A stretch of 64,000 nt of DNA, from the IMG/VR virus record IMGVR_UViG_3300036770_004723, positions 62,001 through 126,000 of that record; one strand, written 5' to 3'. The notes under the pieces were generated by a model that searched no databases, was not told where the DNA came from, and saw only the letters and a program-made list of their open reading frames with translations. The translations under genes and the position numbers were made by a program. This document shows, piece by piece, positions 10,200 to 58,592 of the stretch (positions are counted from its first letter, which is position 1; each line of letters opens with the position of its first letter).

Positions 10200-10221
10200 A
10201 AGGCCGCAATTGCGGCCTTTT
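10198..10221. terminator. Intrinsic terminator
   Basis: AAAAGGCCGCAATTGCGGCCTTTT after the helicase gene. Confidence 0.75.
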
Positions 10222-10230
10222 TATCAAATT

Positions 10231-11607: not shown

Positions 11608-12040
11608 TACCTTTTCTAAATTCTAAATCATTTATCACAGTATTTATTAAGAGCAGAGTACAATTTTCATTTTCTAATTTAGTGGTCCATTCATCTAATA
11701 ACTCTTTATTGTTAATATCATAGAACACCTTACTAGGTTTTCTAGCTTGTGGTCTATTCTGTCTTTGTCTTAAGATTGGTGGATTCCCAGTTACATCTGT
11801 TTGTAGTGCCGAAAGCATTTGATTAATAGATTCCAGACTGTAAGGAAATCTCTTCCCTAAATGAAAAGTGATCATGTTATTTGAGATACCTGGATATCTC
11901 TTTACGGTCTTAAGAACAACATAAAGTAAATTATTTTTCTCAGCAAACATGCCCTGAGAAATCATGCCAAACAGAACAGACCTTTTCACCATTAAGTCGT
12001 GGTCTACTTTACCTGCCAGCAGCAACTCTGTGGTACTCAT
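11594..12040 (-). CDS. Hypothetical protein (possible winged helix)
   Basis: VKRYPGIS...helix pattern. Confidence 0.6.
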   Translation of the reverse strand: MSTTELLLAGKVDHDLMVKRSVLFGMISQGMFAEKNNLLYVVLKTVKRYPGISNNMITFHLGKRFPYSLESINQMLSALQTDVTGNPPILRQRQNRPQARKPSKVFYDINNKELLDEWTTKLENENCTLLLINTVINDLEFRKGSVNV

Positions 12041-12057
12041 TATAGTTTTCCCTTTAG

Positions 12058-13182: not shown

Positions 13183-13195
13183 TTTAAATATTCCC

Positions 13196-14296
13196 TTACT
13201 TAATCAAACTACCCAATTCAACACGAGAAGACTTTTTAGTCTTTTTGGCTTTAGCTTTAGTTGTTTCCTCTTGTTCTTCCATACGCGCATCTAAAACTTT
13301 TTCCAAGTGCGCTAAATATGAAGTCGCTAGTATTTCACGTATTTCATCAAGATCTTCATTTTTTATCAAATCCTTAGGGATCCGAATTTTATACTTACGT
13401 GCGAAACGTTGCAGCTGACGCAGACCCATATCAACAAGATCTTCGGCGCAGGTAATTTCTTTACCATAATCAACGCCTTCATCTAAGGATACATGACCCT
13501 CTTCGTCTTCATAAGCAGCTTTAGCTATACCTTTATCAATATCACGGGCTATGTCACTAAGGCTGTAGATCTTAGTGCCTGCATCTTCAGCACGTTTTAG
13601 TTGATCACGGTTTCGTTTTGCAACAGAGCCAATGTCATCAATAAAGCCCATCACCCCGTTAGTGTTTAGTTTAAGATCAAAATCTGATTCAAGAGGTTTA
13701 ACTTTCTTATCAAACTTTTCAGGACTAGGATCTAAATAGAGACCTTTAAATTCTAACTTACGGCGCAACACTTCAAATTGAGGCAAAGTAAAAACATTTT
13801 TTTCATTACCCATATTCTGAAAAGACATAACAATCTTTCCATCATCACTACAGACTCTAATAAGGTTACTGTCCACACTCAAAATACGAGCAGTCATGAA
13901 ATTAGATAAATACGTGCGCGAAAGTGTACCACGATATCTAACATAAACTTTCTGCAAAAAAGTATAATTGTGTTTTCTAGTAATATTTTCATTTAATAAA
14001 ACCGCAGCAAAAGTACGTAATTGCTCTAAACTGAAGCCGCGAATTACGTCAGCTAATTCGAAAAGACTGCTGCCATTTTTTTCCACACTTTCAGCAAGCG
14101 CAACACTGTTAGGTGTAAAACTAGAACAAGATACATGGCTGGCTTTTTTGCCTTGTTTGCTACAAGTAACGTTTTCCCCGTTAATTAAACGTTCTCTGGT
14201 TAACCCTATACATTCACCACAGGTTAGTTTTTCTTCGGTTAATACTCTTACCCGAATTTTTTGTCCTGTCTTCTGAATAGTTGAGTTCTTTGCCAT
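13196..14296 (-). CDS. Hypothetical protein with Cys cluster and C-terminal HeH/Rho-N-like module
   Basis: CGEC..C..C; LVDMGLRQLQRFARKYKIRIP; ends SSRVELGSLIK. Confidence 0.7.
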   Translation of the reverse strand: MAKNSTIQKTGQKIRVRVLTEEKLTCGECIGLTRERLINGENVTCSKQGKKASHVSCSSFTPNSVALAESVEKNGSSLFELADVIRGFSLEQLRTFAAVLLNENITRKHNYTFLQKVYVRYRGTLSRTYLSNFMTARILSVDSNLIRVCSDDGKIVMSFQNMGNEKNVFTLPQFEVLRRKLEFKGLYLDPSPEKFDKKVKPLESDFDLKLNTNGVMGFIDDIGSVAKRNRDQLKRAEDAGTKIYSLSDIARDIDKGIAKAAYEDEEGHVSLDEGVDYGKEITCAEDLVDMGLRQLQRFARKYKIRIPKDLIKNEDLDEIREILATSYLAHLEKVLDARMEEQEETTKAKAKKTKKSSRVELGSLIK

Positions 14297-14792
14297 TTTT
14301 CTTATATCCTTTGGAACTTAATGTAAAGTTTATGCAAAACAGAAGAGTTTGTTCCATGTTTGTAATACCAGCCAAATCCTTTTTCAGCAATTCAAGACCT
14401 TGCCTTGTGGCAGGATCTGCATGTACCATAGGAAGCAACGTCATTTTTGCATTCGATGATACTGGAGGTCTTAATAGTGCATCTACTAATATCTTTAACC
14501 AAACTTCGGCACGTCTTTCCGCAGTTTCATCTGACCAGAATTTTTGAAGAGGACCAGACTTCTTTGCTCCTATACGCGCAACCACAGCATCTGCTTTTGC
14601 GTGAAGTGTTGTATGACAAGATCCATCAAGAGGTATTTGCAGACTTTCATGGCCACCGCACGATCTAGGTATAGTATGATGCCAATTAATATTTTTAAAA
14701 AAATTACCGCAAATACAACACTGTTCGAATCCATCTGATCTAGCAACTACAGGTAACTTATTTTCTATTTTTGTTTTTGACATTACGACCAC
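14214..14792 (-). CDS. HNH-family protein
   Basis: CCIC...WHHTIPRSCGG...SCHTTLH. Confidence 0.75.
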   Translation of the reverse strand: MVVMSKTKIENKLPVVARSDGFEQCCICGNFFKNINWHHTIPRSCGGHESLQIPLDGSCHTTLHAKADAVVARIGAKKSGPLQKFWSDETAERRAEVWLKILVDALLRPPVSSNAKMTLLPMVHADPATRQGLELLKKDLAGITNMEQTLLFCINFTLSSKGYKKNGKELNYSEDRTKNSGKSINRRKTNLW

Positions 14793-16071
14793 CTAAAGGC
14801 AGTCCCCAAGATAAAACTTTAACGTTGCCTTTAGTTTGGCTATAAAGGTTTCTATATACAGATGAAGGAACTACCCAAGCTAATGCAATGTCATTGTTTT
14901 TGGGGCTAGTTAAAAATTCAGAAGACATTAAACTATATTCATGCCCTCGCTCACGCAACTGTTCTAAAAATTCTGTTACTCTAGTGTAGTAAACATTAGA
15001 AGATTTTTTCTCAAGCGCTCTTACACGAGATTGATGTAAAGACTTTGATTCACTGACTCTTTTAATTGCTTTACCTATATTAGAATCTTGTCGATCTAAC
15101 TCTGATTGTTTTAAAGAAAGTTGTTCAGTAAGTTCCAGCTTTTTTACTTTAGTAAGTGTACCAATACGCTTATATGAAAGCAAAAGATTCTCAATCTTTT
15201 CTATTTCAGATTTAAGTTTACGCAGTTTAGATCGCTCAGACTTTAAATTAATTTTAGCCAATTTTAACTTGTTGGCAATCGGGTCATTGTCTACAATGTT
15301 ATGCGCGATTTCTTCGGCAGAAGTACGGCTAAATTGAAGAATTGTCTGCTTGGTCAATATCAAAGCTATATCACTGCTATCCGCAGCTGCCAGACCTAAA
15401 GGCTCTACAGTTTTAAAAACATTACGTAAAATTTTAGTGTTACGTAATGCAACGTTTTCGAATGAAACAGTAATAGGTAATTCAACTGGTAATACTGCGT
15501 CACGGGATATATCTAATTTCTCATTTTTAATTTTACTGACTAACGAATTTGATATCAACTTGGTGTAAGCAGAAAGCTTATTATTGACATATTCGTATTG
15601 AGCGTTAGAAAAATCACAATCGTTTTCTGTTACCTCAGAAGAAACTTTTTCTAAAGCTGCTTCAGGGTCTTCGTTGTATTTTTCAATTTGATTGTATGCT
15701 GCTGCTTGTAGATCTTGCAACCTATCGAATACATCTGTGCGAACTTCTTTGCAGAAAGTTGGTACATTTATTTCTCGATTGCTTACAGCATACTTTAAGG
15801 ATCTTATAGTATTAATTAGGTAGATTGTCGGCTTTTTCTGTTTTGAAAACTTACGATTTGATTTCGAAGCCGTCAAAAAATCTTCTAATTGATCTATAGT
15901 TGTTTGAAGGGTTTTTAAAGTTATATCTGCATTTTTAAAGTTTAAAGCATTATCTGCTTTTTTTATCAATTTTTGAGTTGAGCTAATGCTCGACATCAAT
16001 GATTGAAGTGCGTTGACTTCTGACATTGTTGTTATTCCTTTTTCCATTTTTTTAATAATATGGGTTTTCAC
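14758..16071 (-). CDS. Hypothetical coiled-coil protein
   Basis: Long ORF; start may be MSEVN (16025). Confidence 0.7.
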   Translation of the reverse strand: MKTHIIKKMEKGITTMSEVNALQSLMSSISSTQKLIKKADNALNFKNADITLKTLQTTIDQLEDFLTASKSNRKFSKQKKPTIYLINTIRSLKYAVSNREINVPTFCKEVRTDVFDRLQDLQAAAYNQIEKYNEDPEAALEKVSSEVTENDCDFSNAQYEYVNNKLSAYTKLISNSLVSKIKNEKLDISRDAVLPVELPITVSFENVALRNTKILRNVFKTVEPLGLAAADSSDIALILTKQTILQFSRTSAEEIAHNIVDNDPIANKLKLAKINLKSERSKLRKLKSEIEKIENLLLSYKRIGTLTKVKKLELTEQLSLKQSELDRQDSNIGKAIKRVSESKSLHQSRVRALEKKSSNVYYTRVTEFLEQLRERGHEYSLMSSEFLTSPKNNDIALAWVVPSSVYRNLYSQTKGNVKVLSWGLPLGGRNVKNKNRK

Positions 16072-16132
16072 CCGAAAGAGCTAGAGAATAAAAATTAGTG
16101 TTCTCTAGCTCTTTTCCTAAAGGTCTAAATTG

Positions 16133-19100
16133 TCAGTTTTTAGCCTTTTTCTTTTTGGCCGATTTTTTAGTTTCGGCAATAGAAGCGTTCATTAGCTTTA
16201 TATACTTATTTACAGATTCACTCAATGAAGAGGAAATACGCGGATTAGGATTTTTTAAATCTTTCTTCCAACCTTTAATATCAGCCTGCGCAGTCTTTAG
16301 CTTATCTTTAATAGTATTAAGCTCTAGCTTAGCCAAGCTACGCAACTTTCTTTCAATAATATAGGTTGCGCGTTCTCGATCAATCTTTAATGTTTTTGCT
16401 GCGTAGGTATCTGGATCATCTTTGTCCAAAGCCTTTTTCATTACCTCCAATACTTTATCTTTATTTATAACAGCAAACATTTGTGTTTCATATTCCCAAA
16501 TGTCACGCTCACGTTTGCTAATAACGTTTTCGAGATATTTTTGTTCTAAAACTATGCGGTATTTTACCCATTGGGTAATGTAATTACTAAAGTTTACATA
16601 AGCAAACTTTGTTTTCGTTTCATCGACATGGTTAACTACTAAACCTAAATTGTAGAATTGACTACCAGTTAAAATCTTTTTAACTTTTTCAGCTAAATCA
16701 TACAGGCCGTCGTCGTCAACACCGCGTTTAGGTACAACGTAGTAATATGCTCCGAATGCGCCAGCGTTCGGTCGCTTATCACCACAGTCGCTTACCCAAC
16801 GACTTACTCCAGGTAATTCACGAATTTTATCTCGCTTCTTTTCAACCATTTCTTCAGATTGAAAACCAGGTGCATAAGAAACAATTTCAATGATTTTATT
16901 TTTATAGTCAATATTTATCTTAGGGCGATATTTTATTGCCTTAGCTCGACCTGTTTTAATAAAATCTTCTAGTTCTTCTTTGGTAGAAACACATTCAGAT
17001 CCAAACGGCGCATTTATTCTTAAATGCTTGACACATTCTTCATCCGTAACTTTGCCTTTATTCAAAGCAATTTCAACCAACTTTGCAACACCTTCAATTT
17101 CAAAACTTGGATTACAGGCACGAACGCCATAGGCAATACCACCTTCGTTACCAATCAATAACATTGTTGGAAGCAATGAAGGCAAATATAATGGAATATC
17201 TTCACTGTCATCGAAGTTTTTAATTCTGGGAACAACTTCAAGATAACCACTATCAAGTAAAAACATTTTTGCGTAGTCGGCTAATCGCACTTCGGTATTA
17301 TGTACAATCATACCGTTCGCTGTATAAGAATTACTCACAGGAACAGTGAGATCGTAAGTAGGTTCATCTCCTATATACTCGATACGTTTGATAGGCACTA
17401 AGAAATAGTTCTTATCTAAAATATTAGTCAGTTTATCCACAAAAGTAGGGAAATATTTCCCTACAAATTTACCGACCTGTGTTAGCCAAAGTTTTAAAGA
17501 TTCTAAAGTCAATGGCATACTGCGTCCAGATAGTCCATATAGCATAGAGGCTATGTACTTAGGAATTGGATTGCCTTCTTCATCTTCTTGTTTACTCAGA
17601 ATGTCTTCATAATAAGATCGCACAACTTCAGGTAAGAAACTTAGTTTCTGATTATCATACGCCGAATTGAGTACATTACCGCTTTTACGTTCAGATAAAA
17701 ATCCGATTTCAGATTGAAATCTGTCGTGCATTAGTTTACTGCATAGATAAAGAGTGTCTTTAGTTTGTGCAAAAGGTAATCCAAATTTAGATACTAGAAT
17801 CGTCTGAAGTTGATCTAAAAGTTTGGAACTTTTGGATGTATACGTAACGCCGGACGCATGTGCAGATCCATCTCCTTCAAATAGTGAGGAAAGAAATGAA
17901 ACCATCTCGACTTTACTCGACATAAGTACGCATAGCGGAACTTCTTTCTCACGAGCAACACACGGAAAAATTCCATTAGCAGATAAAAAAGAAATTAAAT
18001 GCGTACTATTTATAGTACATTGGGCATACGGACGTTTAGCCCAATTTATACCATCAGGCTCACGCCATGTGACTGATACATGTACGTTTTCAAATAAAGA
18101 TTCAGTCAATTCTACAAATAAATCAACCATATCTTTATCAGAATTCATAAATTGGACTGTGTGTTTAGTAATGCTACCTTCTGAAATAACCAAACCTAAC
18201 CAAGTGGCGAATTCCGAAGACATTTTCTTGGGGAGACCTAATATCTTCATGGAAGAACTTCTACCTTCAATATCAGGCTGGTTTAAAAGTTTTGATCCTT
18301 TAGTCCATTTAATTTTAGGATCTCTTTTATAGCAAACTATGTCTCCTTCAGAAATATCTTCAATAGTTTTCCAACTAAAGTCTAGATTAGAATCTAAAGT
18401 AAGTAAAGGTTCATTACTTGTACCTTTAATTTTACCTAAGCGAGTTTCAACTTCAAAGATCTCACGAACACCACTGTCTAACCAGTGTGTAGCTAATTCA
18501 ACACCATCACGCGATTCAACTTTCAAAGAAATTTCTAGTTTGCGTTTAGGTGTCTTGCCTAAGACTTCAGGTATACGTCCAATAGGAAGTAAGCCTAATT
18601 CAGAACTAACTAAAGTATCAGCGGTAAAACAATAACGCTGGGCGGCAGCATTATCAATCGGTGAACCCCAGTTTCCACGACCTTGCGCAAGTTTTGGAAA
18701 AGTATTTGCAATAGTAACTAACGCGCCATAGCAGGCGCTATTATGCGCAAGCATTACTCTTAAACTGTTATCTTGTGAATTACGTCCAGTAGCAATCAAC
18801 ATGTTTTCATTACCTTTAACAGTAAAATCATACATTGGAATTGCTTTTTTACTTTTAACCAGTTTAATACTACGTACTGCTAAATATCCAGCAGTAGGTA
18901 ATCCTTCAATATAATCTCCATGATGTGAGGCATGTTCAGATCTATCAAGAACTACGATATTGTCCGGTCTATTATTTTCACGATCACCGTCACTATGATG
19001 ATAAATTTCGTCAGTGTCTTTATCATCATACAAGTAAGCTCCAGACAACTCATGAAGATTACAAGATACATGCGTATTCAGCGAAAGTTTATGGTAAGAT

Positions 19101-19747
19101 TCTCTTAAGATCTGCCCACCTACCAATTGCTGACCTACCTCCAAATTTTCTGTACTAATCCATTTACCTTCAACAGACATAAATGGATGGTTGCCAGTTG
19201 CTTTTACTACATCACCATTAGAAAGTTCAATATGATAAATGTCTTTAGTAACTTGCCCTACTCTAAATGAGTGCGCTAAAGCAGGCTCAATTATTTGTTT
19301 TTCTTCATTGTAAGACCAGACCCATATAGGATCTGATCCTAAAAGGTTTTTAATTTTGCGTACAGATCCATCACAACCTAACACACGAGTATTACCAGAT
19401 AGGCAATCGCCATGAGGGTGGTATTTACCTATGGTATCACCAATAACACGGGCAGATTTTTTAAAATCTGATCCATGTAAATTAAGTTTGTGCATTGCAT
19501 AAATCAAATGCCTGTGTACAGGTTTAAGTCCATCACGAAATTCTGGAACAGCTCTATCTTTTACAACATACTCACCATATTCAAATAAATTTTCTTTTGC
19601 AAAAACAGACATCATTGCAATAGAAATTTTGCTCTGTTTAATCGTGTTAGGTAAAACAAAATCGGTTTTAGTTGCCGGAAGTTTTTTAACTTTTTTTGTT
19701 TTAATTTCACCCAGCTCTACTCTGCCAGTCTTTTTTGTTTTTTTCAT
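16133..19747 (-). CDS. gyrA: Type IIA topoisomerase subunit A (GyrA/ParC-like, no beta-pinwheel CTD), two inteins
   Basis: DRAVPEFRDGLKPVHR, KSAR, GKYHPHGD|S, AAQRY|TE; start set at ATG 19747 because the -10 element lies at 19783-19788; about 537 aa after splicing. Confidence 0.93.
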   Translation of the reverse strand: MKKTKKTGRVELGEIKTKKVKKLPATKTDFVLPNTIKQSKISIAMMSVFAKENLFEYGEYVVKDRAVPEFRDGLKPVHRHLIYAMHKLNLHGSDFKKSARVIGDTIGKYHPHGDCLSGNTRVLGCDGSVRKIKNLLGSDPIWVWSYNEEKQIIEPALAHSFRVGQVTKDIYHIELSNGDVVKATGNHPFMSVEGKWISTENLEVGQQLVGGQILRESYHKLSLNTHVSCNLHELSGAYLYDDKDTDEIYHHSDGDRENNRPDNIVVLDRSEHASHHGDYIEGLPTAGYLAVRSIKLVKSKKAIPMYDFTVKGNENMLIATGRNSQDNSLRVMLAHNSACYGALVTIANTFPKLAQGRGNWGSPIDNAAAQRYCFTADTLVSSELGLLPIGRIPEVLGKTPKRKLEISLKVESRDGVELATHWLDSGVREIFEVETRLGKIKGTSNEPLLTLDSNLDFSWKTIEDISEGDIVCYKRDPKIKWTKGSKLLNQPDIEGRSSSMKILGLPKKMSSEFATWLGLVISEGSITKHTVQFMNSDKDMVDLFVELTESLFENVHVSVTWREPDGINWAKRPYAQCTINSTHLISFLSANGIFPCVAREKEVPLCVLMSSKVEMVSFLSSLFEGDGSAHASGVTYTSKSSKLLDQLQTILVSKFGLPFAQTKDTLYLCSKLMHDRFQSEIGFLSERKSGNVLNSAYDNQKLSFLPEVVRSYYEDILSKQEDEEGNPIPKYIASMLYGLSGRSMPLTLESLKLWLTQVGKFVGKYFPTFVDKLTNILDKNYFLVPIKRIEYIGDEPTYDLTVPVSNSYTANGMIVHNTEVRLADYAKMFLLDSGYLEVVPRIKNFDDSEDIPLYLPSLLPTMLLIGNEGGIAYGVRACNPSFEIEGVAKLVEIALNKGKVTDEECVKHLRINAPFGSECVSTKEELEDFIKTGRAKAIKYRPKINIDYKNKIIEIVSYAPGFQSEEMVEKKRDKIRELPGVSRWVSDCGDKRPNAGAFGAYYYVVPKRGVDDDGLYDLAEKVKKILTGSQFYNLGLVVNHVDETKTKFAYVNFSNYITQWVKYRIVLEQKYLENVISKRERDIWEYETQMFAVINKDKVLEVMKKALDKDDPDTYAAKTLKIDRERATYIIERKLRSLAKLELNTIKDKLKTAQADIKGWKKDLKNPNPRISSSLSESVNKYIKLMNASIAETKKSAKKKKAKN
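17297..18631 (-). mobile_element. GyrA intein 2 (445 aa, LAGLIDADG endonuclease) right after the catalytic Tyr
   Basis: RY|CFTADT...WLGLVISEG...FLSSLFEGDG...IVHN|T; same site as mycobacterial GyrA inteins. Confidence 0.95.
18740..19405 (-). mobile_element. GyrA intein 1 (222 aa, HNH motif)
   Basis: HPHGD|CLSGNT...ATGNHPF...HHSDGDRENNRPDN...LAHN|S. Confidence 0.93.
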
Positions 19748-19782
19748 AAACTTTTCCAGTTCCGTAGATAAATACGTCAAGC

Positions 19783-19841
19783 ATTATACGGGATTAAAAT
19801 TTGAAAATCAATACAAGGCTTTTGACACACCTCGATCAGTT
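19783..19841 (-). promoter_or_regulatory. Sigma70 promoter with conserved upstream box (gyrA)
   Basis: AACTGATCGAGGTGTGTC-N12-TTGATT-N17-TATAAT. Confidence 0.8.
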
Positions 19842-20275
19842 CACAGTAAACTTGGTAAACCTTTAGGCAATATTACTTTTAAAAAAGCTGTATACAGTGG
19901 ACGATCAAAAGGAGAATTTGAAGAAATATAAGAAATATACGATTTCATATCAGGTAGCTTCAAACAGCTCAAAGTTTTTTCATTTGAAACTTTTATAGCT
20001 TCTTCAGGAATTAAAACAGAATTAGTGTTCAACCAAGCAAGACCTTCTGTGAAGACACGCGGAACCGAACCAATCAATTCATTTGGAGGATATTTTATAA
20101 AAAATCCTTGACTATCTATAATTGTCAAGGCTGCTTGATGTAGTTTTGTATCAGCTAAACATTCAAGCTTTGAATTGTATTCTACTTTAGATTTTACCCA
20201 TGACACATCGTTCTGTAAAACGCCTTGCGAAAAAAACATGTATACGTATTTTTTACTCATTAAACACCTCAACAA
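19841..20275 (-). CDS. Hypothetical protein
   Basis: ORF between gyrB-C and gyrA. Confidence 0.6.
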   Translation of the reverse strand: MLRCLMSKKYVYMFFSQGVLQNDVSWVKSKVEYNSKLECLADTKLHQAALTIIDSQGFFIKYPPNELIGSVPRVFTEGLAWLNTNSVLIPEEAIKVSNEKTLSCLKLPDMKSYISYISSNSPFDRPLYTAFLKVILPKGLPSLL

Positions 20276-20655
20276 ATATTGTATAAACTATTTTGAGTGA
20301 ATGGAAGAAGTGCCATCTTTTTCTTAAAGATTTCTCTTGATCCGTAATTATTTTTTATGTTAGCTCTAATTGATTTAAGATCAAGCAGTGTTTTCGTATC
20401 CCAATCACTAGCTTCAATACTAATGCGATCAAGTACATTTATTATAATGCTGGATACTCTGTTTACTTTTTTAGGCCATACACATTTTATTATATAACCA
20501 CTGTCATCAAGAATAATAAAAGAAAGTTTTTTAACTCTGTGATCTAAATGATTTACCTTCAACCAAAAAACTGAAAGACTACTATTTTGCATGTAGTCTG
20601 GATTCATTTTAAACGGAGTAAAACTCAGATCCACAAGTAAATAGTAGTTTTTCAT
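20269..20655 (-). CDS. Hypothetical protein
   Basis: IILDDSGYIIK resembles IIDSQGFFIK of the neighbouring ORF; possible paralogs. Confidence 0.6.
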   Translation of the reverse strand: MKNYYLLVDLSFTPFKMNPDYMQNSSLSVFWLKVNHLDHRVKKLSFIILDDSGYIIKCVWPKKVNRVSSIIINVLDRISIEASDWDTKTLLDLKSIRANIKNNYGSREIFKKKMALLPFTQNSLYNIC

Positions 20656-20662
20656 AACTCTT

Positions 20663-21403
20663 TTAATCCGATTCAGTTAGACCTAATAGTTTTCTACGTG
20701 CTGAAGCATCTTCACCAACAACAGATTTAAAGAAATCTAGATCTTGTTTTACACTATCATATTCAATCTGAATAAGATTACGGTTAGTTGGATCGAACGC
20801 AATCGCCTCTAAAAGATCTGCGTTAGTTTCTCCCCAACCTTTAGCACGGAATACACTTCCCTTAGGTGCATTCTTAGGCAGCTGCTTTAAACATTCCTCA
20901 AATGAATCACCGCTGTAGTGTTTGCCATCAACCAAAGCATTGTACAAACTTGCTTGAACAACAAACAAACGTCCTTCCCGAATGAAATCTGGAAGCAACT
21001 TATAAAACAGTGCAATCAATAGTGTATTGATGTGTGAACCATCTGCGTCAGCATCTGCAAGTAACAAGCAAACTGCTGCACGTAGATTCTTGGTGCTGAA
21101 TGTTGGATTATCTGCTTTAACATCCAAACTTTTTATATCAACACCGAGACTTGCCAAAATATCTTGAATACGATCATTAGAAAGCAACTTAGGTAAACTA
21201 ACGTTTAAAGCATTCGGAATTTTACCACCGAGTTTCAATACTTCTTGATTGTAACCACGCGCATTCTTAGCGGAATTATGAACTACCGCTCCATTACCTA
21301 AACAGAAATTATGATTCTGCGTTACAGTTAGATCGTATACAGGTACAGGATTATCCAGCTTAATAGTCCGGATCGACCTTACCTTTATTGTTGATGGTGT
21401 CAC
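20663..21403 (-). CDS. gyrB: GyrB C-terminal gene: 43-aa C-intein plus 203-aa TOPRIM/tail extein
   Basis: AAAGGGGA SD then GTG at 21403; PVYDLTV..NHNF..NGAVVHN|SAKNAR...LGGKIPN...DADADGSHI...RAKGWGE. Confidence 0.92.
   Translation of the reverse strand: MTPSTIKVRSIRTIKLDNPVPVYDLTVTQNHNFCLGNGAVVHNSAKNARGYNQEVLKLGGKIPNALNVSLPKLLSNDRIQDILASLGVDIKSLDVKADNPTFSTKNLRAAVCLLLADADADGSHINTLLIALFYKLLPDFIREGRLFVVQASLYNALVDGKHYSGDSFEECLKQLPKNAPKGSVFRAKGWGETNADLLEAIAFDPTNRNLIQIEYDSVKQDLDFFKSVVGEDASARRKLLGLTESD
21275..21403 (-). mobile_element. Split intein, C-half (IntC)
   Basis: Blocks F and G, terminal HN followed by Ser+1; no N-terminal intein blocks. Confidence 0.92.
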
Positions 21404-21455
21404 ATGAATCCCCTTTAACAATGATAATTTAGACTTTTAATAAATAGGAGTTTAT

Positions 21456-22661
21456 ATGAACCTAATCAAGCTACATGCACAAGTATTAAAATTTCCAAAA
21501 GAGCTTAAAAAGATTCTGACTATGTTTATATCAAACAGAAACAGACGAGGTTGTAATGCTTTGCTTAATAAGCCTAATTCCAATATAGGTAAATTACTAC
21601 GTGATTCGTTTAAGTCCCCTATAAATAAGATTGCTATTTCAGATCTACATACAGCGTTAACAGGTGAAGCTTCTGCCGTATGTTTAAGAAAAGGATGTAC
21701 AAACAAAACAAATTACTGCTATGCCGACCGCAAATTTCGAGCGTGCTGTTCTAAGAAATGTGCAAACATATCAGGTTATACTCAAGCTAAACGTGAAGAA
21801 GTAATGCTTGATCGTCACGGTGTAAAAAACCCATACCAAATGCCTTCTACTAAGAAGAAAATTGAGGAAACTAATCTCAAAAAATATGGCGTAAAAAATC
21901 CTTCTTCGTCTGAAAAAGTAAAGCTTAAACGTAAGAAAACTTTTCAGGATCGTTATGGTATAAATTCACCAATGGAAAGTTCTGAATTTAAAGACAAACA
22001 AAGAGCCGTACTTTTAGAAAATCATGGTGTAGATAATCCAATGAAGTCTTCTAAAATTCGATCTGAAATGTCAGAAAGATTTAGAATGAAGCATGGTGTA
22101 ACTAATCCAATGCAAGTTCAAGAATTCGTAACTAAATCTCAGAAAAACTACGAATTGGCTTGCATTAAAAAGTATGGAGTACGTAATGCAATGCAGTCTC
22201 CAGAAATTCTTAAAATATGGTCCAGTGCGCAATCAAAAAGAACTGAAATTTCACTATGTGGTACAACACTAAATCTACAAGGCTATGAAGAACATGCGTT
22301 AAATTGTCTTTACCGATCAAAACCTTTCAAGTCAATAACTAATGATCCTACAAAGATGCCTCAGGTCAATTACACAATTAACGGTAAGTCGAGGGTGTAT
22401 CTGCCTGATGCTGCAATCAAAATGTTTGATGAATCTATAAGAGTGATCGAAGTAAAAAGCTGGTACACACTATCAAAAAAAGACAACTACTACAAATTTC
22501 GTGCAGCTACTAAATTTTATAACTCAATAGGTGTCGATTTTATTCTTGTAATCGTAGACGACAAAACAGGCGCATTAAAGATCTTATTTAATCCATATAA
22601 AGGGTTAAGATCTTTAATACGCGCAGCGAAAGTTCTTAGCTCAGGCCGTCGAACTTGGTAA
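21456..22661 (+). CDS. Free-standing putative homing endonuclease, antisense inside fractured gyrB
   Basis: GGAG SD; Cys motifs (CCSKKC), six [KR][YH]G[VI]x[NS][PA] repeats, C-terminal YLPD...VIEVK PD-(D/E)xK domain. Confidence 0.85.
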   Translation: MNLIKLHAQVLKFPKELKKILTMFISNRNRRGCNALLNKPNSNIGKLLRDSFKSPINKIAISDLHTALTGEASAVCLRKGCTNKTNYCYADRKFRACCSKKCANISGYTQAKREEVMLDRHGVKNPYQMPSTKKKIEETNLKKYGVKNPSSSEKVKLKRKKTFQDRYGINSPMESSEFKDKQRAVLLENHGVDNPMKSSKIRSEMSERFRMKHGVTNPMQVQEFVTKSQKNYELACIKKYGVRNAMQSPEILKIWSSAQSKRTEISLCGTTLNLQGYEEHALNCLYRSKPFKSITNDPTKMPQVNYTINGKSRVYLPDAAIKMFDESIRVIEVKSWYTLSKKDNYYKFRAATKFYNSIGVDFILVIVDDKTGALKILFNPYKGLRSLIRAAKVLSSGRRTW

Positions 22662-25600
22662 TGTGATCTTCTACTGTAAGATCTTTTGCTTTAGTATATT
22701 CACTTCCAGTCAACCACAGATGATCTGGTGTACACAGCCAAACACTGTTATCTTCCAAAGTAACCTCAATAAGTTCATCCACGTATTTAGTTATACGTGG
22801 ATGTTCTAGTAGTGATATCTCAAAAGCGTCTTTTTCAATCGAATAGCTAACTCCTTCACAAACAAAACCTCTTTCATACATATATACAAGTTCTTCGAAA
22901 GTAATTGTATTCCCGTTCGACAATTTTACAGGTGTACTTGCAATAAAACAACCTCCCGCAGAATCGCCCTCCACCAAGTATAATTCGCGTTCATGAGGTT
23001 TGCAGTTTGGTGCTTCATAGAGTTTGACAGGTAAACTGCCTTGACTCTTTTTGACCTCGCTCATTCCTTTCATGACTTTTGCAAGATCTTCACGCGAAGC
23101 AGCAACTTCAGATGCACGTTTAATAATTGCTTTTGCCAGACTTTTGTTTTTCTTAAAGAATTCCGTTAAAGGCTCTGTTAAAAGATCCGTAACTTCATTG
23201 TCAATTTTACTTACAAGTTTATCCTTTACCTGTCCGCTAAACTGAGCGCTGTTCATTTTCCAGTTTATTAAGGCAACGGCACCAACATACAAATCATCTG
23301 GTTTAAATGCGCCAGATTTTTTAGGCATATAATCTTTTAAGGCTTTCGACATAGCTGCACGGAAACCTGTTACGTGTGTACCATGATCAACTGTTGGGCT
23401 ACTGTTTACGTAGCTACGAAATAAATCTGTGTCGTGGTAATTGGACCACTGAATAGCTACCTTTAATCTGCCTGAATCGAATTCGAAAGGCTTACCTATA
23501 CCTTCAAGCTCACGATCTTGTAGAATGTTTCCAATTATACCTGATAAACCTTTATCATTGTAAAATTCTTTGATTTTATTTGTTTCAAGATCGTGTAAAG
23601 TCAAAAGAAGTTTAGGGTTCATGGTACTCATGAACTTTAAATAATCTTCAACTATAGTCGGCTGTAAAATAGCCTGAGTGTATGTTTTTAATTTTTTTGT
23701 TCGGTTAGCGTCAACGCTGATCACACTTTGGTCAGGAACAAAGCGAACAATAGATCCTAAACGTTTATACTTTTTCTTGATAGTAGCTAGATAACCAAAT
23801 TGTTTTTTCAGAAAAGAATCAGAAACTTTTTTAACTTCAGTTATTGCTTTACCACAACTAAAGCCTTGGTAATACCATTGATTTTCACGGCAAGTCCAAA
23901 CTTCAAATTCTTTACTTATAGCATTCAGCGCAGAAATCCCGACACCATGAGTATTACCAACAAACACACCACTAGCTAATAAGTAGGTATGATCATTTTC
24001 AACACTCAGCCCGTATACAGGAACCTTGTCAACTTTTTTGATTTCAACAGAAACAACTTTATGGTTACGTTCTTGAGCTAATGATGCAAGTTCTGAATTC
24101 GAAGAACACGAATCAAAATATTTAGCCAATTCAACACCAGTTTCCCAGTTCGGACTGCCAGCTGTACGATTGTTTTCATACCAATCTTTATCTATATGTC
24201 CTACTTCTGACAAGCAAGCATTCAATGTAATCAAAAAACGAGAATACGCAGTTTGTTTACGTCTGTCTGTGTAATCAGAAACTTTTTGTTTGGCTTCTAA
24301 TCTACGTTGTTTGGCTTCAAGCTTAATTCTTCTGTTTTCAGCCTCTACACCAGTATATAGAAACACATCTGGATTAAGTCCGTGAGCAACACAGTCAACA
24401 AAACGTCCAATCGTAATATATTTTAAAACGGAAGCAGCATTTAAAGTTTTAGCTGATTTTAAAATGGCATAAATTTTGTTGAAGTCTAAGTCCAATAATT
24501 CTTCCTGAGTTAATTTTTGATCAAAAACAAAATTCAAAGCTTTACCTACAATTCGTTTTGCAGTCATGAACTCTGAGTTATCAAAAATCATTGAATTGGC
24601 AGATAGACCAACTTCGTAATCTAACGAATCAAAAAATCTCTGGCCAATTTCTTGTTTCTTATCAAGTCGATCTTGGAAATAAGCAACAGTATCTTCTACG
24701 TACTTTCTGAAAGTAGCAGGCTTATCAAAATAATATTTTAAAGTTGACCAGCTAGGAGCGCCATGAAACCTGTTAGCTTCGTAAAGCTCTTTATTAATTC
24801 GTCCAAATTTTACGAGACAACGGCTACCAATTTTAATTGCTTTGCCTGTAACTTGCTTGAATATAAAATCTGGATCTGTATTTAGCTCTGTAAGCATTTC
24901 AGATTTTAAATGAGCAGTTTCTTTTACGAAATCCATCCAAGCAAACCATTTATCAGGATGTTCTTCATAATGTTCTTTCTGTGTAATCGCTTTTAAATTT
25001 TCATAACGATTATCAGTCTTATCTTCGTTTTCGTGGTGAACGTGAAGATTATCAATATCTTCACCGTTATACTCCATGACGAATCTGTGAACACGACCTA
25101 ATTCACGGCTAACTAAATAGCCATCTTTATCTTGTTTAAAATCCAATGATCTCAAGCTCATACCAGCTTTTAGTTTTTGAGCCTGAACTTTCTTTAAACC
25201 TGTTGTGTAGAATGGATGGTCAACTGTACATTCAATTGTTTCACCGTTATCAAGTTCAATAACTGCAAGTTGATCGACATACTTAGTTATTTGGACATTG
25301 TAACAGGCGTTGATTCCGACTTCACCTGTTTTAGGATCTAAACTAAACACATCGAAAGGTTTAGCGTCATCTTCAAAACGTGAATACAATTCTTCAAAAG
25401 TTGGAGTAGTTCCATCAAGCAACCTGACACGAGTTGATCCTACAAAACAGCCACCAGATGTTTCATAAGCACTACTGTCAAATTTGCCTCCAGCATGTAG
25501 CTCAGTCAGGATTAATGTCAATGCACTAATCTTTTTACCGTCGATCAACTTATCGCCTACAGGGATACCTTGCGCACAATCTGCAATAACGTATTCACCT

Positions 25601-25812
25601 ACTTTATTATTATAAGCAACGTAAATAGCATTGTTACGGCCAGCTTCGTATTCGTCACGGCTGTTTTCAACAGGCTCTTTGATAGCCCGAAACATCATGG
25701 CGTCACCTAATTCACCTAAATACATCGCGACATTGCCACGAACTTTATCTAGACCTAAAAGGGCTTTGATGTCATCTTCATTATATGTTTTAGTTTTTAA
25801 CTTTGCCATCAA
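22636..25812 (-). CDS. gyrB: GyrB N-terminal gene: GHKL ATPase and transducer, cis intein, C-terminal N-intein
   Basis: EPVENSRDE, GIPV, LHAGGKF, SGG|THGVG, GTHVTGF, FSGQVK, ELYLVEGDSAGG|C. Confidence 0.94.
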   Translation of the reverse strand: MMAKLKTKTYNEDDIKALLGLDKVRGNVAMYLGELGDAMMFRAIKEPVENSRDEYEAGRNNAIYVAYNNKVGEYVIADCAQGIPVGDKLIDGKKISALTLILTELHAGGKFDSSAYETSGGCFVGSTRVRLLDGTTPTFEELYSRFEDDAKPFDVFSLDPKTGEVGINACYNVQITKYVDQLAVIELDNGETIECTVDHPFYTTGLKKVQAQKLKAGMSLRSLDFKQDKDGYLVSRELGRVHRFVMEYNGEDIDNLHVHHENEDKTDNRYENLKAITQKEHYEEHPDKWFAWMDFVKETAHLKSEMLTELNTDPDFIFKQVTGKAIKIGSRCLVKFGRINKELYEANRFHGAPSWSTLKYYFDKPATFRKYVEDTVAYFQDRLDKKQEIGQRFFDSLDYEVGLSANSMIFDNSEFMTAKRIVGKALNFVFDQKLTQEELLDLDFNKIYAILKSAKTLNAASVLKYITIGRFVDCVAHGLNPDVFLYTGVEAENRRIKLEAKQRRLEAKQKVSDYTDRRKQTAYSRFLITLNACLSEVGHIDKDWYENNRTAGSPNWETGVELAKYFDSCSSNSELASLAQERNHKVVSVEIKKVDKVPVYGLSVENDHTYLLASGVFVGNTHGVGISALNAISKEFEVWTCRENQWYYQGFSCGKAITEVKKVSDSFLKKQFGYLATIKKKYKRLGSIVRFVPDQSVISVDANRTKKLKTYTQAILQPTIVEDYLKFMSTMNPKLLLTLHDLETNKIKEFYNDKGLSGIIGNILQDRELEGIGKPFEFDSGRLKVAIQWSNYHDTDLFRSYVNSSPTVDHGTHVTGFRAAMSKALKDYMPKKSGAFKPDDLYVGAVALINWKMNSAQFSGQVKDKLVSKIDNEVTDLLTEPLTEFFKKNKSLAKAIIKRASEVAASREDLAKVMKGMSEVKKSQGSLPVKLYEAPNCKPHERELYLVEGDSAGGCFIASTPVKLSNGNTITFEELVYMYERGFVCEGVSYSIEKDAFEISLLEHPRITKYVDELIEVTLEDNSVWLCTPDHLWLTGSEYTKAKDLTVEDHITKFDGLS
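22639..22950 (-). mobile_element. Split intein, N-half (IntN, 104 aa)
   Basis: DSAGG|CFIASTPV...CTPDHLWLT...AKDLTVEDHI then stop; blocks A and B only. Confidence 0.92.
23953..25449 (-). mobile_element. GyrB cis intein (499 aa, HNH) in the ATP lid
   Basis: SGG|CFVGST...CTVDHPF...HVHHENEDKTDNRYEN...VFVGN|T. Confidence 0.92.
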
Positions 25813-25814
25813 GG

Positions 25815-26174
25815 TTAACCTTCTATAAATCTTTCACTGAGAATTCTAATGCAAGTCTGTGTGACTATTTCATTTTTTTCTGGAAGAATATTTGAATTCA
25901 AATTCAAAACAAGTTCAGCATATTCTTTTAATATATCAGGATCAGTAATATCATTTATGGCTATTTCTGAAAAATTACTATCCATTGCTGTTACTTTAAA
26001 CAGCATTTTAGAATTAAGGCCATCACCATTTAAAGTAATAAGGAAAAAACAAGAATTTCTTTTTACTACACGAAAAATTTCCTTTTTTAATTCTTCGATA
26101 AGTTCTATGTGTTTACTTATAAAACTATGTGCTTCCAGTTCGGCAGCTTTGACCTTTCCTATTAACCAAGACAT
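25815..26174 (-). CDS. Hypothetical protein
   Basis: Coupled ORF. Confidence 0.6.
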   Translation of the reverse strand: MSWLIGKVKAAELEAHSFISKHIELIEELKKEIFRVVKRNSCFFLITLNGDGLNSKMLFKVTAMDSNFSEIAINDITDPDILKEYAELVLNLNSNILPEKNEIVTQTCIRILSERFIEG

Positions 26175-26584
26175 ATATTTTTGCCTATACGAGAAATAAG
26201 GTTTTTAGTTTTTTGTGTTACGTCGTTAATTATTTTTTCAGCGTTGTATCCACCGTCCTCAAGTCTTTTTACTAAAGGATTAAGAATATCTATAGCCGCT
26301 AAGAATCCGTTTTGTTTTTGTTCTAAAAGGGATAACTCAAGAGCGTAGGTAGATACAACAAATTCATGGTAGCATTTATCTTCTGGATCTAAATTAGATC
26401 CATTTATTAATCTAATAGATTTTAGATTATCTTGATTTAGACGAAAGATTGCTTTCTCTGTTTCTAGCAGATTAAGTTTATTTAAAAGTAAATGGTTTGA
26501 TAGAGTGGAGTAAATAGAGGAAATTTCCATAGAAGAGTTCAATATACAGTCTATATCATTAGAAAGCCCTAACAAATTTTCCAT
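26162..26584 (-). CDS. Hypothetical protein
   Basis: GGGAG SD. Confidence 0.65.
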   Translation of the reverse strand: MENLLGLSNDIDCILNSSMEISSIYSTLSNHLLLNKLNLLETEKAIFRLNQDNLKSIRLINGSNLDPEDKCYHEFVVSTYALELSLLEQKQNGFLAAIDILNPLVKRLEDGGYNAEKIINDVTQKTKNLISRIGKNICLG

Positions 26585-54579: not shown

Positions 54580-54673
54580 AAGAAATTCCTTATAGCAAGT
54601 ATTAACCTATATTTACAGTTTTGTCATTTATACGAAAAAAGGCAGCCATAATAGGCCGCCTATTTAAACAATA

Positions 54674-58520: not shown

Positions 58521-58592
58521 GGCTATTTTCCTTCTAACAGGTTAAACTGTAAATACTGTAGTATAAATTATGATTAAACCTGAGTATGTAAC

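What the first reader, a model, noticed from the sequence alone, without database searches (positions are those of the whole stretch)
21404..22661. Endonuclease is inverted, overlapping IntN tail-to-tail and IntC head-to-head
Seen: the 401-aa + strand ORF overlaps the gyrB-N 3' end by 26 nt and starts 52 nt from the gyrB-C start codon. It has Cys motifs, six [KR][YH]G[VI]x[NS][PA] repeats and a PD-(D/E)xK domain, rather than the LAGLIDADG or HNH domains normal for inteins. Inference: a foreign endonuclease invaded the endonuclease loop of a cis intein in reverse and split it. gyrB read-through RNA would be fully antisense to the endonuclease mRNA, which could silence the nuclease early; a TAATTTA motif at 21425-21431 may drive it late.
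Basis: partly seen in the sequence, partly recalled or inferred. Interest (0 to 1): 0.7.

Follow-up and report, generated by a model that had tools for sequence, protein, structure and literature searches.

The report
Phage gyrB split by backwards endonuclease
A jumbo phage's only topoisomerase (gyrB-like) gene is cut in two inside an intein by a selfish nuclease gene lying on the opposite strand; this backwards version of a known "fractured gene" layout is conserved in many uncultured phages.

Summary
ORF 21456-22661 (+, 401 aa) lies between gyrB-N/IntN (22636-25812, -) and IntC/gyrB-C (20663-21403, -). It overlaps IntN's tail by 26 nt and starts 52 nt from the GTG start of IntC.

The ORF has four parts: an N-terminal helical domain, a C4 zinc ribbon, six 23-aa DUF7487 repeats, and a TnsA-like PD-(D/E)xK nuclease. 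DUF7487 marks the "Hef-like" free-standing homing endonucleases.

All eight other split-gyrB loci I sampled carry the same backwards ORF, and at least 29 50%-identity clusters of split gyrB N-fragments exist. Relatives with a contiguous mini-intein at the same EGDSAGG|S/T site exist, and so do relatives with an empty site.

The ORF is under purifying selection (dN/dS 0.115). The two intein halves are predicted to dock.

So this is a "fractured gene" in the sense of Dassa et al. 2009, with three departures: a new host gene, a new endonuclease type, and an inverted orientation where the published cases are all same-strand.

The late TAATTTA promoter has circumstantial support. Antisense silencing is untested and somewhat weakened. 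No RNA data exist.

Verdict: a new variant of a known kind, of moderate interest.

The parts
22636..25812 (-). N-terminal fragment of the phage's only gyrB-like topoisomerase II large subunit (1058 aa). It runs N-extein, then a complete cis HNH intein, then more N-extein ending ...VEGDSAGG, then IntN.
   Evidence: Pfam DNA_gyraseB, Intein_splicing and HNH_3; PHROG 543 topoisomerase II large subunit. It is the single PF00204 match in the 286.6-kb genome.
23953..25449 (-). Separate, contiguous 499-aa intein with an HNH endonuclease domain (aa 122-620 of gyrB-N). It is not part of the split.
   Evidence: Pfam Intein_splicing 138-620 and HNH_3 241-281; boundaries CFVGSTRV...VFVGN found.
22639..22950 (-). 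IntN, 104 aa: Cys1 (CFIASTPV, block A), block B CTPDHLWL, then a tail ...ITKFDGLS. The last 8 sense codons and the stop of the IntN frame lie within the 26-nt overlap, on the antisense of the ORF's last codons.
   Evidence: It is 46-57% identical to IntN of other split and cis gyrB inteins. Predicted to dock with IntC: ipSAE 0.76, best control 0.00.
21456..22661 (+). Inverted free-standing endonuclease gene (401 aa). Parts: N-terminal helical domain (aa 1-70); C4 zinc ribbon (C76, C81, C98, C102); six 23-aa DUF7487 helix-loop repeats (aa 107-245); TnsA-like PD-(D/E)xK nuclease (aa ~258-395; E278, D318, E332, K334).
   Evidence: Pfam DUF7487 at 122 bits (cut-off 27) and Tn7_TnsA-like_N at 25.7 bits. 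PHROG 3339 and 12131, 'homing endonuclease'. AlphaFold pLDDT 90.4. Fold matches to TnsA Z 8.6, Vsr 6.3, I-Ssp6803I 6.0. Invariant catalytic residues. dN/dS 0.115 in a close pair of orthologues.
22636..22661 (.). 26-nt tail-to-tail overlap. The ORF frame (...SGRRTW*) is conserved across the 402-aa clade. The IntN frame on the other strand is not (KFDGLS, KYDDLS, KFDGHY, KCVDPY, TPITR).
   Evidence: Relatives show overlaps of 24-26 nt in the closest clade and 41-74 nt in distant ones.
21404..21455 (.). 52-nt divergent spacer. It holds the gyrB-C ribosome-binding site AAAGGGG (21416-21410, -), the conserved box CAATGATAATTTA containing TAATTTA (21425-21431, +), and the ORF's ribosome-binding site AGGAG (21446-21450, +).
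   Evidence: Read directly. The box is conserved in window, L002, L003, L006 and L020. TAATTTA enrichment and its association with sheath genes.
21275..21403 (-). IntC, 43 aa from GTG 21403: ...VYDLTVTQNHNFCL (block F) and GAVVHN (block G), followed by the +1 Ser of the C-extein.
   Evidence: Pfam Intein_splicing positions 122-155; docking prediction.
20663..21274 (-). C-extein of gyrB: the rest of the Toprim domain plus the GyrB C-terminal domain, 203 aa, then the stop codon.
   Evidence: Pfam Toprim and DNA_gyraseB_C; PHROG 543. About 51% identical to the uninterrupted genes of Dickeya JA13 and phage NCTB.
22561..22622 (-). 17-bp hairpin (22570-22622) followed by CUGUUUUGU (22561-22569), 18 nt downstream of the gyrB-N stop and inside the ORF's 3' coding region. 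It may be a terminator or stabiliser for the gyrB-N transcript. It is specific to this lineage.
   Evidence: MFE -27.7 kcal/mol, z -4.1. Comparable hairpins occur in L002, L023 (with a U6 run) and L024, but not in L003, L006, L020 or L022. No conserved register or covariation.

Best explanation
This is a fractured gene. The phage's single gyrB-like topoisomerase II large-subunit gene carries a class-1 intein in the Toprim motif EGDSAGG|S. The intein is physically broken at its canonical endonuclease-insertion loop by a cassette of about 1.25 kb, roughly 21404-22661.

The cassette encodes, on the opposite strand, a free-standing Hef-like homing endonuclease. Its predicted parts are an N-terminal helical domain, a zinc ribbon, six DUF7487 repeats (probably DNA-binding) and a TnsA-like PD-(D/E)xK nuclease.

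Shown here:
- The anatomy of the locus.
- The family memberships of the ORF.
- Conservation of the catalytic residues and purifying selection on the ORF.
- Recurrence of the layout in 8 other diverged loci.
- Existence of cis-intein and empty-site alleles.
- Predicted docking of IntN with IntC.

Inferred:
- The two gyrB halves are translated separately and joined by protein trans-splicing.
- The nuclease cuts intein-less gyrB alleles of related co-infecting phages near the EGDSAGG|S/T codons. Repair then copies IntN, the ORF and IntC together.
- The cassette supplies the extra codons and stop of IntN (the antisense of the ORF's last codons) and the ribosome-binding site and start of IntC.
- The ORF is transcribed from the short divergent spacer, probably from the late-type TAATTTA box, convergently with gyrB-N.
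- The inverted orientation is inherited from one ancestral insertion rather than being a trait of the family.
For: Anatomy:
- Layout and coordinates.
- Splice-site residues are all present: Cys1, block B TxxH, blocks F and G, terminal HN, +1 Ser.
- IntN/IntC complex: ipSAE 0.76, best control 0.00, run agreement at least 88%, partner pLDDT at least 72. That mark was reached by 51 of 78 solved complexes and 2 of 108 mismatched pairs.

Insertion point:
- The cis mini-intein P0157 (143 aa) aligns across the break...GTVLK-SNSMKL-IAVTNTEK....
- Empty sites occur in PaBG and JA13.

Endonuclease identity:
- DUF7487 at 122 bits.
- PHROG 'homing endonuclease' families.
- The same repeat module is in F-LimIII, which Adriaenssens et al. 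class as Hef-like. Hef is reported to cleave nrdB (PMC2988022).
- PD-(D/E)xK fold and invariant E...D...ExK residues.

Maintenance of the gene:
- dN/dS is 0.115 at dS 0.41, and low in all three domains.
- 9 of 9 loci carry an intact inverted ORF.
- ORF and intein identities co-vary (r = 0.84).
- Intein halves are more alike than both exteins in 27 of 28 locus pairs, which fits lateral spread.

Promoter.

This is the only gyrB in the genome, so the split gene must work.
Against: - No biochemical data exist for any DUF7487+TnsA-like protein, and the target site is unknown.
- No RNA data.
- Intein halves being more conserved than exteins could reflect tighter structural constraint rather than transfer. 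The closest pair, L006/L035, shows even divergence across the cassette and its flanks, which looks like vertical descent.
- The conserved spacer box is anchored to the gyrB-C start, not the ORF start.
- TAATTTA lies 24 nt before the ATG here, against 35-49 nt at most other sites.
- The IntN tree does not show a single origin of splitting.
- The docking score may partly reflect the model's memory of solved split inteins.
Confidence: 0.7

Rival explanations
1. Early gyrB transcription reads from gyrB-N through the whole ORF antisense into gyrB-C. This RNA silences the nuclease early, and a late TAATTTA promoter then switches the nuclease on.
For: - No consensus intrinsic terminator is called on the - strand between gyrB-N and gyrB-C.
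- gyrB-C has only a 52-nt spacer upstream.
- None of the phage's three promoter-like motifs lies at the usual distance on the - strand. The only one is a TAATTTA 187 nt upstream, at 21590-21596.
- TAATTTA precedes two tail-sheath genes, whereas replication genes carry CTGTAAAT and gyrA carries GTGTGTCAA plus a sigma-70-like promoter.
- In T4, endonuclease-specific promoters are middle or late. For the one inverted gene, segD, antisense orientation was argued to keep transcript levels low (PMC2988022).
Against: - A 17-bp hairpin plus a U-run lies 18 nt after the gyrB-N stop on the - strand (z -4.1). Strong hairpins occur in 3 of 7 relatives, one followed by U6. Either could stop or trim read-through.
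- The conserved box next to the gyrB-C ribosome-binding site could be gyrB-C's own promoter.
- No RNA data.
- Convergent transcription does not by itself prove silencing.
Confidence: 0.2
2. Domesticated cassette. The nuclease no longer homes. It is kept because the phage needs it, either to degrade or exclude competing phage genomes or as a repair nuclease, or because the cassette's control signals are now needed to express gyrB-C.
For: - Strong purifying selection (dN/dS 0.115).
- Intact ORFs in every locus sampled, across deep divergence. The classical homing cycle would predict frequent decay after fixation.
- Divergence is even across cassette and flanks in the closest pair.
- The conserved box is tied to the gyrB-C start.
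Against: - Empty-site and cis-intein alleles still circulate in related phages, so targets for homing exist.
- Intein halves are more alike than exteins in 27 of 28 pairs, which favours ongoing lateral movement.
- Dependence on the cassette's control signals would not by itself preserve the catalytic residues.
Confidence: 0.2
3. Different order of events. The intein was already naturally split, with the halves as adjacent genes. The endonuclease gene then landed in the intergenic gap, as free-standing endonuclease genes usually do, so it did not break a contiguous intein. The cis mini-inteins seen today may be re-fusions after loss of the cassette.
For: - On the IntN tree, split and cis labels need 12 changes, and starred branches force only 2. 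Cis mini-inteins (P0157, P0143, P0154, P0167, P0221) are scattered among split ones.
- Dassa et al. found one split gp41 locus without an endonuclease.
Against: - None of the 9 split-gyrB loci lacks the ORF.
- The IntN frame ends inside the ORF's antisense tail, and the IntC start lies at the other edge of the cassette. The stop and start signals therefore look cassette-derived, as in the Dassa model.
Confidence: 0.15
4. The ORF is a remnant of a Tn7-like transposon (a TnsA homologue), not a homing endonuclease.
For: TnsA is the best structural match (Z 8.6; Foldseek probability 1.00, rmsd 4.0) and the only Pfam nuclease hit.
Against: - No TnsB, TnsC or TnsD genes and no transposon ends flank it in any locus.
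- The Pfam hit is below its cut-off.
- The protein lacks the TnsA C-terminal domain and instead carries the Hef-type DUF7487 module.
- It always sits at one site, inside an intein.
Confidence: 0.02

Closest known systems
Fractured genes: split intein plus free-standing endonuclease gene between the halves (Dassa, London, Stoddard, Schueler-Furman, Pietrokovski 2009, PMC2677866)
   Same: - An essential DNA-metabolism gene of a phage is broken in place.
- The break lies between intein blocks N4 and C2.
- A free-standing endonuclease gene fills the gap.
- The stop of the upstream half and the start of the downstream half lie at the edges of the inserted element.
- The endonuclease is not LAGLIDADG or HNH, and has a restriction-endonuclease-like fold.
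   Different: - In the published set all three coding regions are on one strand, and the endonuclease's 3' end overlaps the IntC start. Here the endonuclease is inverted, overlaps the IntN tail instead, and is divergent from IntC.
- The host gene, gyrB/topoisomerase II, is not among the published hosts (gp41, IMPDH, DnaE, NrdA, NrdJ, ligase, terminase).
- The endonuclease is DUF7487+TnsA-like, not GIY-YIG or Vsr-like.
Hef and Hef-like free-standing homing endonucleases of T4-related and Vi1-like phages (Sandegren et al. 2005; F-LimIII, VII, VIII and X in LIMEstone1, PMC3296691)
   Same: They share the DUF7487 repeat module. They are free-standing phage genes next to or inside conserved essential genes. 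One relative, in E. coli phage ZQ1, is also inverted relative to its neighbours.
   Different: - F-LimIII and the ZQ1 protein pair DUF7487 with an MTES_1575/DUF559-type (Vsr-like) nuclease and are 547-594 aa. This ORF pairs it with a TnsA-like nuclease and has an extra N-terminal domain found only in the gyrB-associated clade.
- None of those is inside an intein.
- My link to Hef itself rests on the LIMEstone paper's table. I did not align Hef here.
PD-(D/E)xK and related homing endonucleases I-Ssp6803I and I-Bth0305I (PMC3239194)
   Same: Restriction-endonuclease-like catalytic core used for homing. Fold similarity is Z 6.0 and 5.6.
   Different: Those are encoded in group I introns, have other DNA-binding parts, and show no detectable sequence similarity. 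TnsA is the closer structural match.
T4 segD, the one T4 homing-endonuclease gene in opposite orientation to its neighbours (Edgell, Gibb, Belfort 2010, PMC2988022)
   Same: A free-standing endonuclease gene antisense to flanking essential genes. Antisense effects on expression have been discussed for it.
   Different: segD is GIY-YIG, sits between genes 23 and 24, splits nothing, and has no recognisable promoter of its own.
Other split phage genes: Aeh1 nrdA split by mobE (PMC3045599) and MIJ3 PolB split intein with an HNH gene (PMC6892783)
   Same: A free-standing endonuclease gene interrupts an essential replication-related gene. The MIJ3 case also involves a split intein in a jumbo phage.
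   Different: Aeh1 has no intein; the halves assemble non-covalently. MIJ3 uses an HNH endonuclease in PolB, and no inverted orientation is reported in the passages read.

Membership tests
Fractured gene (Dassa et al. 2009) | One conserved enzyme gene broken into two genes that keep the original order and orientation at one locus | tested here: met
   gyrB-N 22636-25812 (-) and gyrB-C 20663-21403 (-); together they match an uninterrupted topoisomerase II large subunit.
Fractured gene (Dassa et al. 2009) | Split-intein halves at the broken ends, with the break between blocks N4 and C2 | tested here: met
   IntN is 104 aa with blocks A and B; IntC is 43 aa with blocks F and G. It aligns to the cis mini-intein P0157 across the break. 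Docking ipSAE 0.76 against 0.00 for the best control.
Fractured gene (Dassa et al. 2009) | A free-standing endonuclease gene lies between the halves | tested here: met
   ORF 21456-22661; DUF7487 plus PD-(D/E)xK.
Fractured gene (Dassa et al. 2009) | All three coding regions on the same strand, with the endonuclease 3' end often overlapping the IntC start | tested here: not met
   The ORF is on the opposite strand. It overlaps the IntN tail by 26 nt and is divergent from IntC.
DUF7487 / Hef-like homing endonucleases | Match to Pfam PF24308 above its gathering score; tandem ..YGVxNP.. repeats | tested here: met
   122.4 bits against a cut-off of 27; six 23-aa repeats; F-LimIII and ZQ1 share the module.
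DUF7487 / Hef-like homing endonucleases | Site-specific DNA cleavage and homing (reported for Hef of phage U5) | not testable with these tools
   Only the literature statement that Hef cleaves nrdB (PMC2988022). The primary paper is not held.
PD-(D/E)xK nuclease superfamily | alpha-beta-beta-beta-alpha-beta core with E / (P)D / (D/E)xK catalytic residues | tested here: met
   E278, P317-D318 and E332-V-K334 are invariant or nearly so in 62 sequences. Fold matches to TnsA, Hjc, Vsr, Cas4 and I-Ssp6803I.
TnsA (Tn7 transposition protein) | TnsA N-terminal nuclease domain plus C-terminal domain, encoded with TnsB and TnsC inside a transposon | tested here: not met
   Pfam PF08722 scores 25.7 bits, below its 26.5 cut-off; PDB sequence E-value 0.38. 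There are no TnsB or TnsC neighbours in any of 9 loci. Only the nuclease fold is shared.
Class-1 intein (HINT) competent for splicing | Cys/Ser1, block B TxxH, block F, block G HN, and a +1 Cys/Ser/Thr | tested here: met
   C1; CTPDH; VYDLTVTQNHNF; VVHN; +1 Ser here and Thr in relatives. Splicing activity itself cannot be tested here.
Intein with nested (in-frame) homing endonuclease | Endonuclease domain translated in frame within the intein | tested here: not met
   The endonuclease is a separate gene on the other strand. By contrast, the same gyrB-N also holds a true nested HNH intein at aa 122-620.

The most novel reading that the evidence does not exclude
The inverted orientation is functional, not an accident. 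In this reading the cassette is a self-contained bidirectional control module. It ends the gyrB-N transcript, restarts gyrB-C from a conserved box beside its ribosome-binding site, and places the nuclease gene in convergent, antisense conflict with gyrB transcription. Nuclease production and assembly of the phage's only topoisomerase II would then be timed against each other during infection. This coupling would be why the nuclease stays intact in every lineage.
Probability: 0.15. Interest if true: 0.7.

Novelty: new variant of a known kind. Interest (0 to 1): 0.5.

Why it matters
1. It extends the fractured-gene model of how split inteins arise. The new case has a new host gene, a new endonuclease architecture and, above all, the opposite orientation. 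An invading endonuclease gene therefore need not be co-transcribed with the gene it breaks.

2. It gives a large natural family of split inteins: at least 29 clusters at 50% identity, with IntN of about 100-113 aa and IntC of about 38-47 aa, Cys1, and +1 Ser or Thr. The same family includes close contiguous mini-intein relatives. Earlier metagenomic split inteins (gp41-1, NrdJ-1, IMPDH-1) became widely used protein-ligation tools.

3. It gives a concrete, testable target for the uncharacterised DUF7487 repeat module. Six repeats, a known insertion site and known empty alleles are at hand. Searches of solved structures found no counterpart for this module.

4. It offers a natural system in which to ask whether antisense or convergent transcription controls a selfish nuclease.

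Tried and rejected
- RNA evidence. The only public run holding this DNA is a subsurface metagenome DNA run, probably its source. No RNA run holds it.
- Sigma-70 and terminator consensus scans of 20400-26300 were at or below shuffle expectation (16 against 19.9; 3 against 3.1) and gave nothing usable.
- The T4 late box TATAAATA is not enriched upstream of genes in this phage: 0 oriented sites against 1.4 expected. A near-match right before the ATG (AATAAATA, 21439-21446, read) is too close to leave room for the ribosome-binding site. I dropped it.
- The hairpin after the gyrB-N stop is strong in the window but has no consensus structure or covariation across 7 orthologous loci. Cells paired are 41%, the same as in shuffles. 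I do not claim it as a conserved element.
- PaBG seemed to match IntC (query residues 9-244). Its gyrB is an uninterrupted 671-aa gene, so the extension was alignment spill-over. It is an empty-site allele.
- Tn7-like transposon reading: rejected for lack of partners (see rivals).
- A tree of 76 IntN cores, meant to ask whether splitting happened once, has too few columns (96); most forks are open.
- Identity profile of L006 against L035, meant to detect a recent transfer boundary: divergence is even, with no boundary.
- Whether inverted orientation is a trait of the DUF7487 family: in 7 more distant viral loci the gene is mostly co-oriented with its neighbours, so it is not.
- Literature. I found no paper describing an inverted endonuclease gene inside a split intein, or a split gyrB intein in phages. 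The primary Hef paper could not be read.
Full report
**Context.** The window is bases 62001-126000 of a 286,584-bp IMG/VR phage record with 34.6% G+C, rated complete by CheckV. The only public run holding it is a subsurface metagenome. Its topoisomerase genes are most like those of jumbo phages PaBG, NCTB and the Dickeya and Erwinia Salmondvirus/Alexandravirus group, at about 50% protein identity. Genes from about -4.4 to 63.4 kb in window coordinates run almost entirely on the - strand. The ORF in question is one of a handful of lone + strand genes there.

**Observation.** ORF 21456-22661 (+) encodes 401 aa.
- To its right, on the - strand, is a 1058-aa ORF (22636-25812) matching DNA_gyraseB and PHROG 543, 'DNA topoisomerase II large subunit'. 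It contains one complete HNH intein (aa 122-620). It ends, after ...VEGDSAGG, in a 104-aa N-terminal intein half.
- To its left, also on the - strand, is a 246-aa gene. It begins with a 43-aa C-terminal intein half ending ...GAVVHN and continues SAKNARGY... into Toprim and the GyrB C-terminal domain.
- The ORF and gyrB-N overlap tail-to-tail by 26 nt.
- The mechanical ORF call starts gyrB-C at TTG 21421. The head-to-head relation is adjacency, not overlap.

**What the ORF is.**
- Pfam gives DUF7487 (122 bits, cut-off 27) and Tn7_TnsA-like_N just under its cut-off (25.7 against 26.5). PHROGs gives two 'homing endonuclease' families.
- An AlphaFold model built on 62 homologues is confident (pLDDT 90.4). 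It shows a five-helix N-terminal domain, a small beta-ribbon carrying C76, C81, C98 and C102, six helix-loop units with a 23-residue period, and an alpha/beta C-terminal domain.
- That C-terminal domain matches only PD-(D/E)xK nucleases. TnsA is first (VIA Z 8.6, 125 residues), followed by tRNA-splicing endonucleases and Hjc. Vsr (6.3), I-Ssp6803I (6.0) and the I-Bth0305I catalytic domain (5.6) rank lower.
- Q275, E278, D318, E332, K334 and S335 are invariant in 62 sequences.
- Nothing in the solved-structure searches matched the repeat array.
- In cultured phages the DUF7487 module occurs in proteins annotated as homing endonucleases, including F-LimIII of Dickeya phage LIMEstone1. The LIMEstone paper classes F-LimIII as 'Hef-like' (PMC3296691). 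Hef of phage U5 is reported to cleave nrdB (PMC2988022).
- F-LimIII and an E. coli phage ZQ1 homologue join DUF7487 to a different, Vsr/DUF559-like nuclease. DUF7487 therefore behaves as a portable, presumably DNA-binding, module.
- The genome holds no second copy of this ORF.

**The layout is conserved, not a one-off.** The nine closest ORF homologues (P0002-P0010; 37-48% identity, 402 aa) and several much more distant ones were traced to contigs. In L002, L003/L004, L005, L006/L035, L020/L021, L022, L023 and L024 the ORF (336-402 aa) lies inverted between a gyrB N-fragment ending in IntN and an IntC-gyrB-C gene.
- Tail-to-tail overlaps are 24-74 nt. In L005 a 50-aa ORF sits between, and it takes the overlap instead.
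- A full-database search with IntN plus 20 extein residues found 845 relatives. Among the best 150 cluster representatives, at least 29 are N-fragments ending in IntN at the EGDSAGG|C site. At least 28 carry a contiguous intein there: 15 mini, and 13 with inserts, including LAGLIDADG.
- The 143-aa mini-intein of P0157 aligns to IntN and IntC across the break point, which falls in the loop between blocks N4 and C2.
- PaBG and Dickeya JA13 have the site empty.
- The split gene is the phage's only gyrB.
- IntN and IntC are predicted to dock. ipSAE is 0.76 against 0.00 for the best of three controls, runs agree at 88% or more, and partner pLDDT is at least 72. That mark was reached by 51 of 78 solved complexes and 2 of 108 mismatched pairs. 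The pass may owe something to solved split inteins.

**Is the nuclease alive?**
- Between L006 and L035 (dS 0.41), dN/dS is 0.115 overall. By part it is 0.07 for the N-terminal part, 0.13 for the repeats and 0.11 for the nuclease domain.
- ORF identity tracks intein identity across loci (r = 0.84).
- In 27 of 28 locus pairs the intein halves are more alike than both exteins. Mean identities are IntN 0.49 and IntC 0.63, against N-extein 0.41 and C-extein 0.42. In the L002/L003/L006/L020 group the ORF too is at least as conserved as the exteins. This is what repeated lateral spread of the cassette would give, but tighter constraint on a small fold is an alternative.
- The closest pair shows no transfer boundary.

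**Edges of the cassette.**
- The ORF's last residues (...SGRRTW) are conserved. The IntN residues encoded on the other strand are not (KFDGLS, KYDDLS, KFDGHY, KCVDPY, TPITR).
- IntN therefore reads a few codons into the antisense of the ORF's tail and stops there.
- At the other edge, IntC homology to the cis intein begins 4-5 residues after the start codon.
- This matches the Dassa model, in which the invading element provides the stop of the upstream half and the start of the downstream half, except that here the element is reversed.

**Transcription signals (sequence only).** Upstream regions of this phage are enriched for three motifs.
- aaaCTGTAAATA: 14 oriented sites against 0.2 expected. 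It lies before the DNA polymerase, clamp loader and primase genes.
- GTGTGTCAA followed by a sigma-70-like promoter: before gyrA and in several other - strand upstream regions.
- TAATTTA: 14 oriented against 3.7 +/- 1.9 in shuffles and 7 antisense, mostly 35-49 nt before the start. It lies before both tail-sheath genes.
- The ORF's TAATTTA is 24 nt before its ATG. A ..C(G/A)ACAA..GATAATTT box is conserved in window, L002, L003, L006 and L020. It stays next to the gyrB-C ribosome-binding site even where the ORF start is 205 nt away, as in L006. The box is nearly palindromic (TAATTTA/TAAATTA), so it could serve either gene or both.
- On the - strand, 18 nt after the gyrB-N stop, a 17-bp hairpin followed by CUGUUUUGU folds far better than shuffles (z -4.1). 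L002, L023 (with U6) and L024 have comparable hairpins; L003, L006, L020 and L022 do not. There is no conserved register.
The claim of fully antisense read-through is open and somewhat weakened.

**Comparison with what is known.**
- Dassa et al. 2009 defined fractured genes from 26 metagenomic loci. They state that all three coding regions are on the same strand. The hosts are gp41, IMPDH, DnaE, NrdA, NrdJ, ligase and terminase, and the endonucleases are GIY-YIG or Vsr-like.
- The present family differs in host gene, endonuclease type and orientation.
- Inverted free-standing endonuclease genes are known (T4 segD; ZQ1), but not, in the papers I could search, inside a split intein.
- More distant DUF7487 genes are mostly co-oriented with their neighbours. 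The inversion is therefore best read as inherited from one ancestral insertion, although the IntN tree cannot confirm a single origin.

**Verdict.** The regulatory part remains speculative. This is a new variant of a known kind. It is widespread, conserved and directly testable.

Noticed in passing
window 6557-25812 (- strand): All five inteins of the 286-kb genome lie within about 19 kb: one in the large terminase (6557-9424, PHROG 17415), two in gyrA (16133-19780; one HNH, one LAGLIDADG), one contiguous HNH intein in gyrB-N, and the split one. Every PF14890 match in the genome falls here.
   Followed up: partly
whole genome G000; examples at window 19781-19840, 58521-58592, 54580-54673: There are three upstream motif classes that look like promoter classes. 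aaaCTGTAAATA lies before replication genes. GTGTGTCAA followed by a sigma-70-like TTGATT-17-TATAAT lies before gyrA and small - strand genes. TAATTTA lies before tail-sheath and other large + strand genes.
   Followed up: partly
G000:C1:162625-164283 and 198978-200597 (outside the window): The phage has two tail-sheath paralogues (552 and 539 aa, PHROG 23). Each is preceded by TAATTTA about 40 nt before its start.
   Followed up: no
window 22570-22622: A perfect 17-bp inverted repeat lies inside the ORF's coding sequence (codons for ...LKILFNPYKGLRSLI...). It forms on both strands. L002 has a different but equally strong hairpin around the same NPxKG codons.
   Followed up: yes
L005:1475-1627; L035:587-748 and the 238-nt spacer of L006:4763-5000: Some relatives have picked up an extra small ORF at an edge of the cassette. 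In L005 a 50-aa ORF lies between the endonuclease tail and IntN. In L035/L006 a 53-aa ORF lies in an enlarged spacer between IntC and the endonuclease start.
   Followed up: no
window 58593-59663 (+) and 61596-62750 (+): There are two more lone + strand genes in the - strand block. They are not endonucleases. The first is a DnaG-type primase (CHC2 zinc finger plus Toprim) behind a CTGTAAAT box. The second belongs to PHROG 21298, of unknown function.
   Followed up: yes
L003:8082-10058; L024:1-975: Relatives are also rich in inteins. L003 has a primase with a LAGLIDADG intein. L024 has a 1608-aa protein with Intein_splicing and LAGLIDADG matches next to the split gyrB.
   Followed up: no
window 13196-14296 (-): A further topoisomerase-family gene (PHROG 17701, 'DNA topoisomerase', 366 aa) lies a few kb downstream of gyrA.
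   Followed up: no
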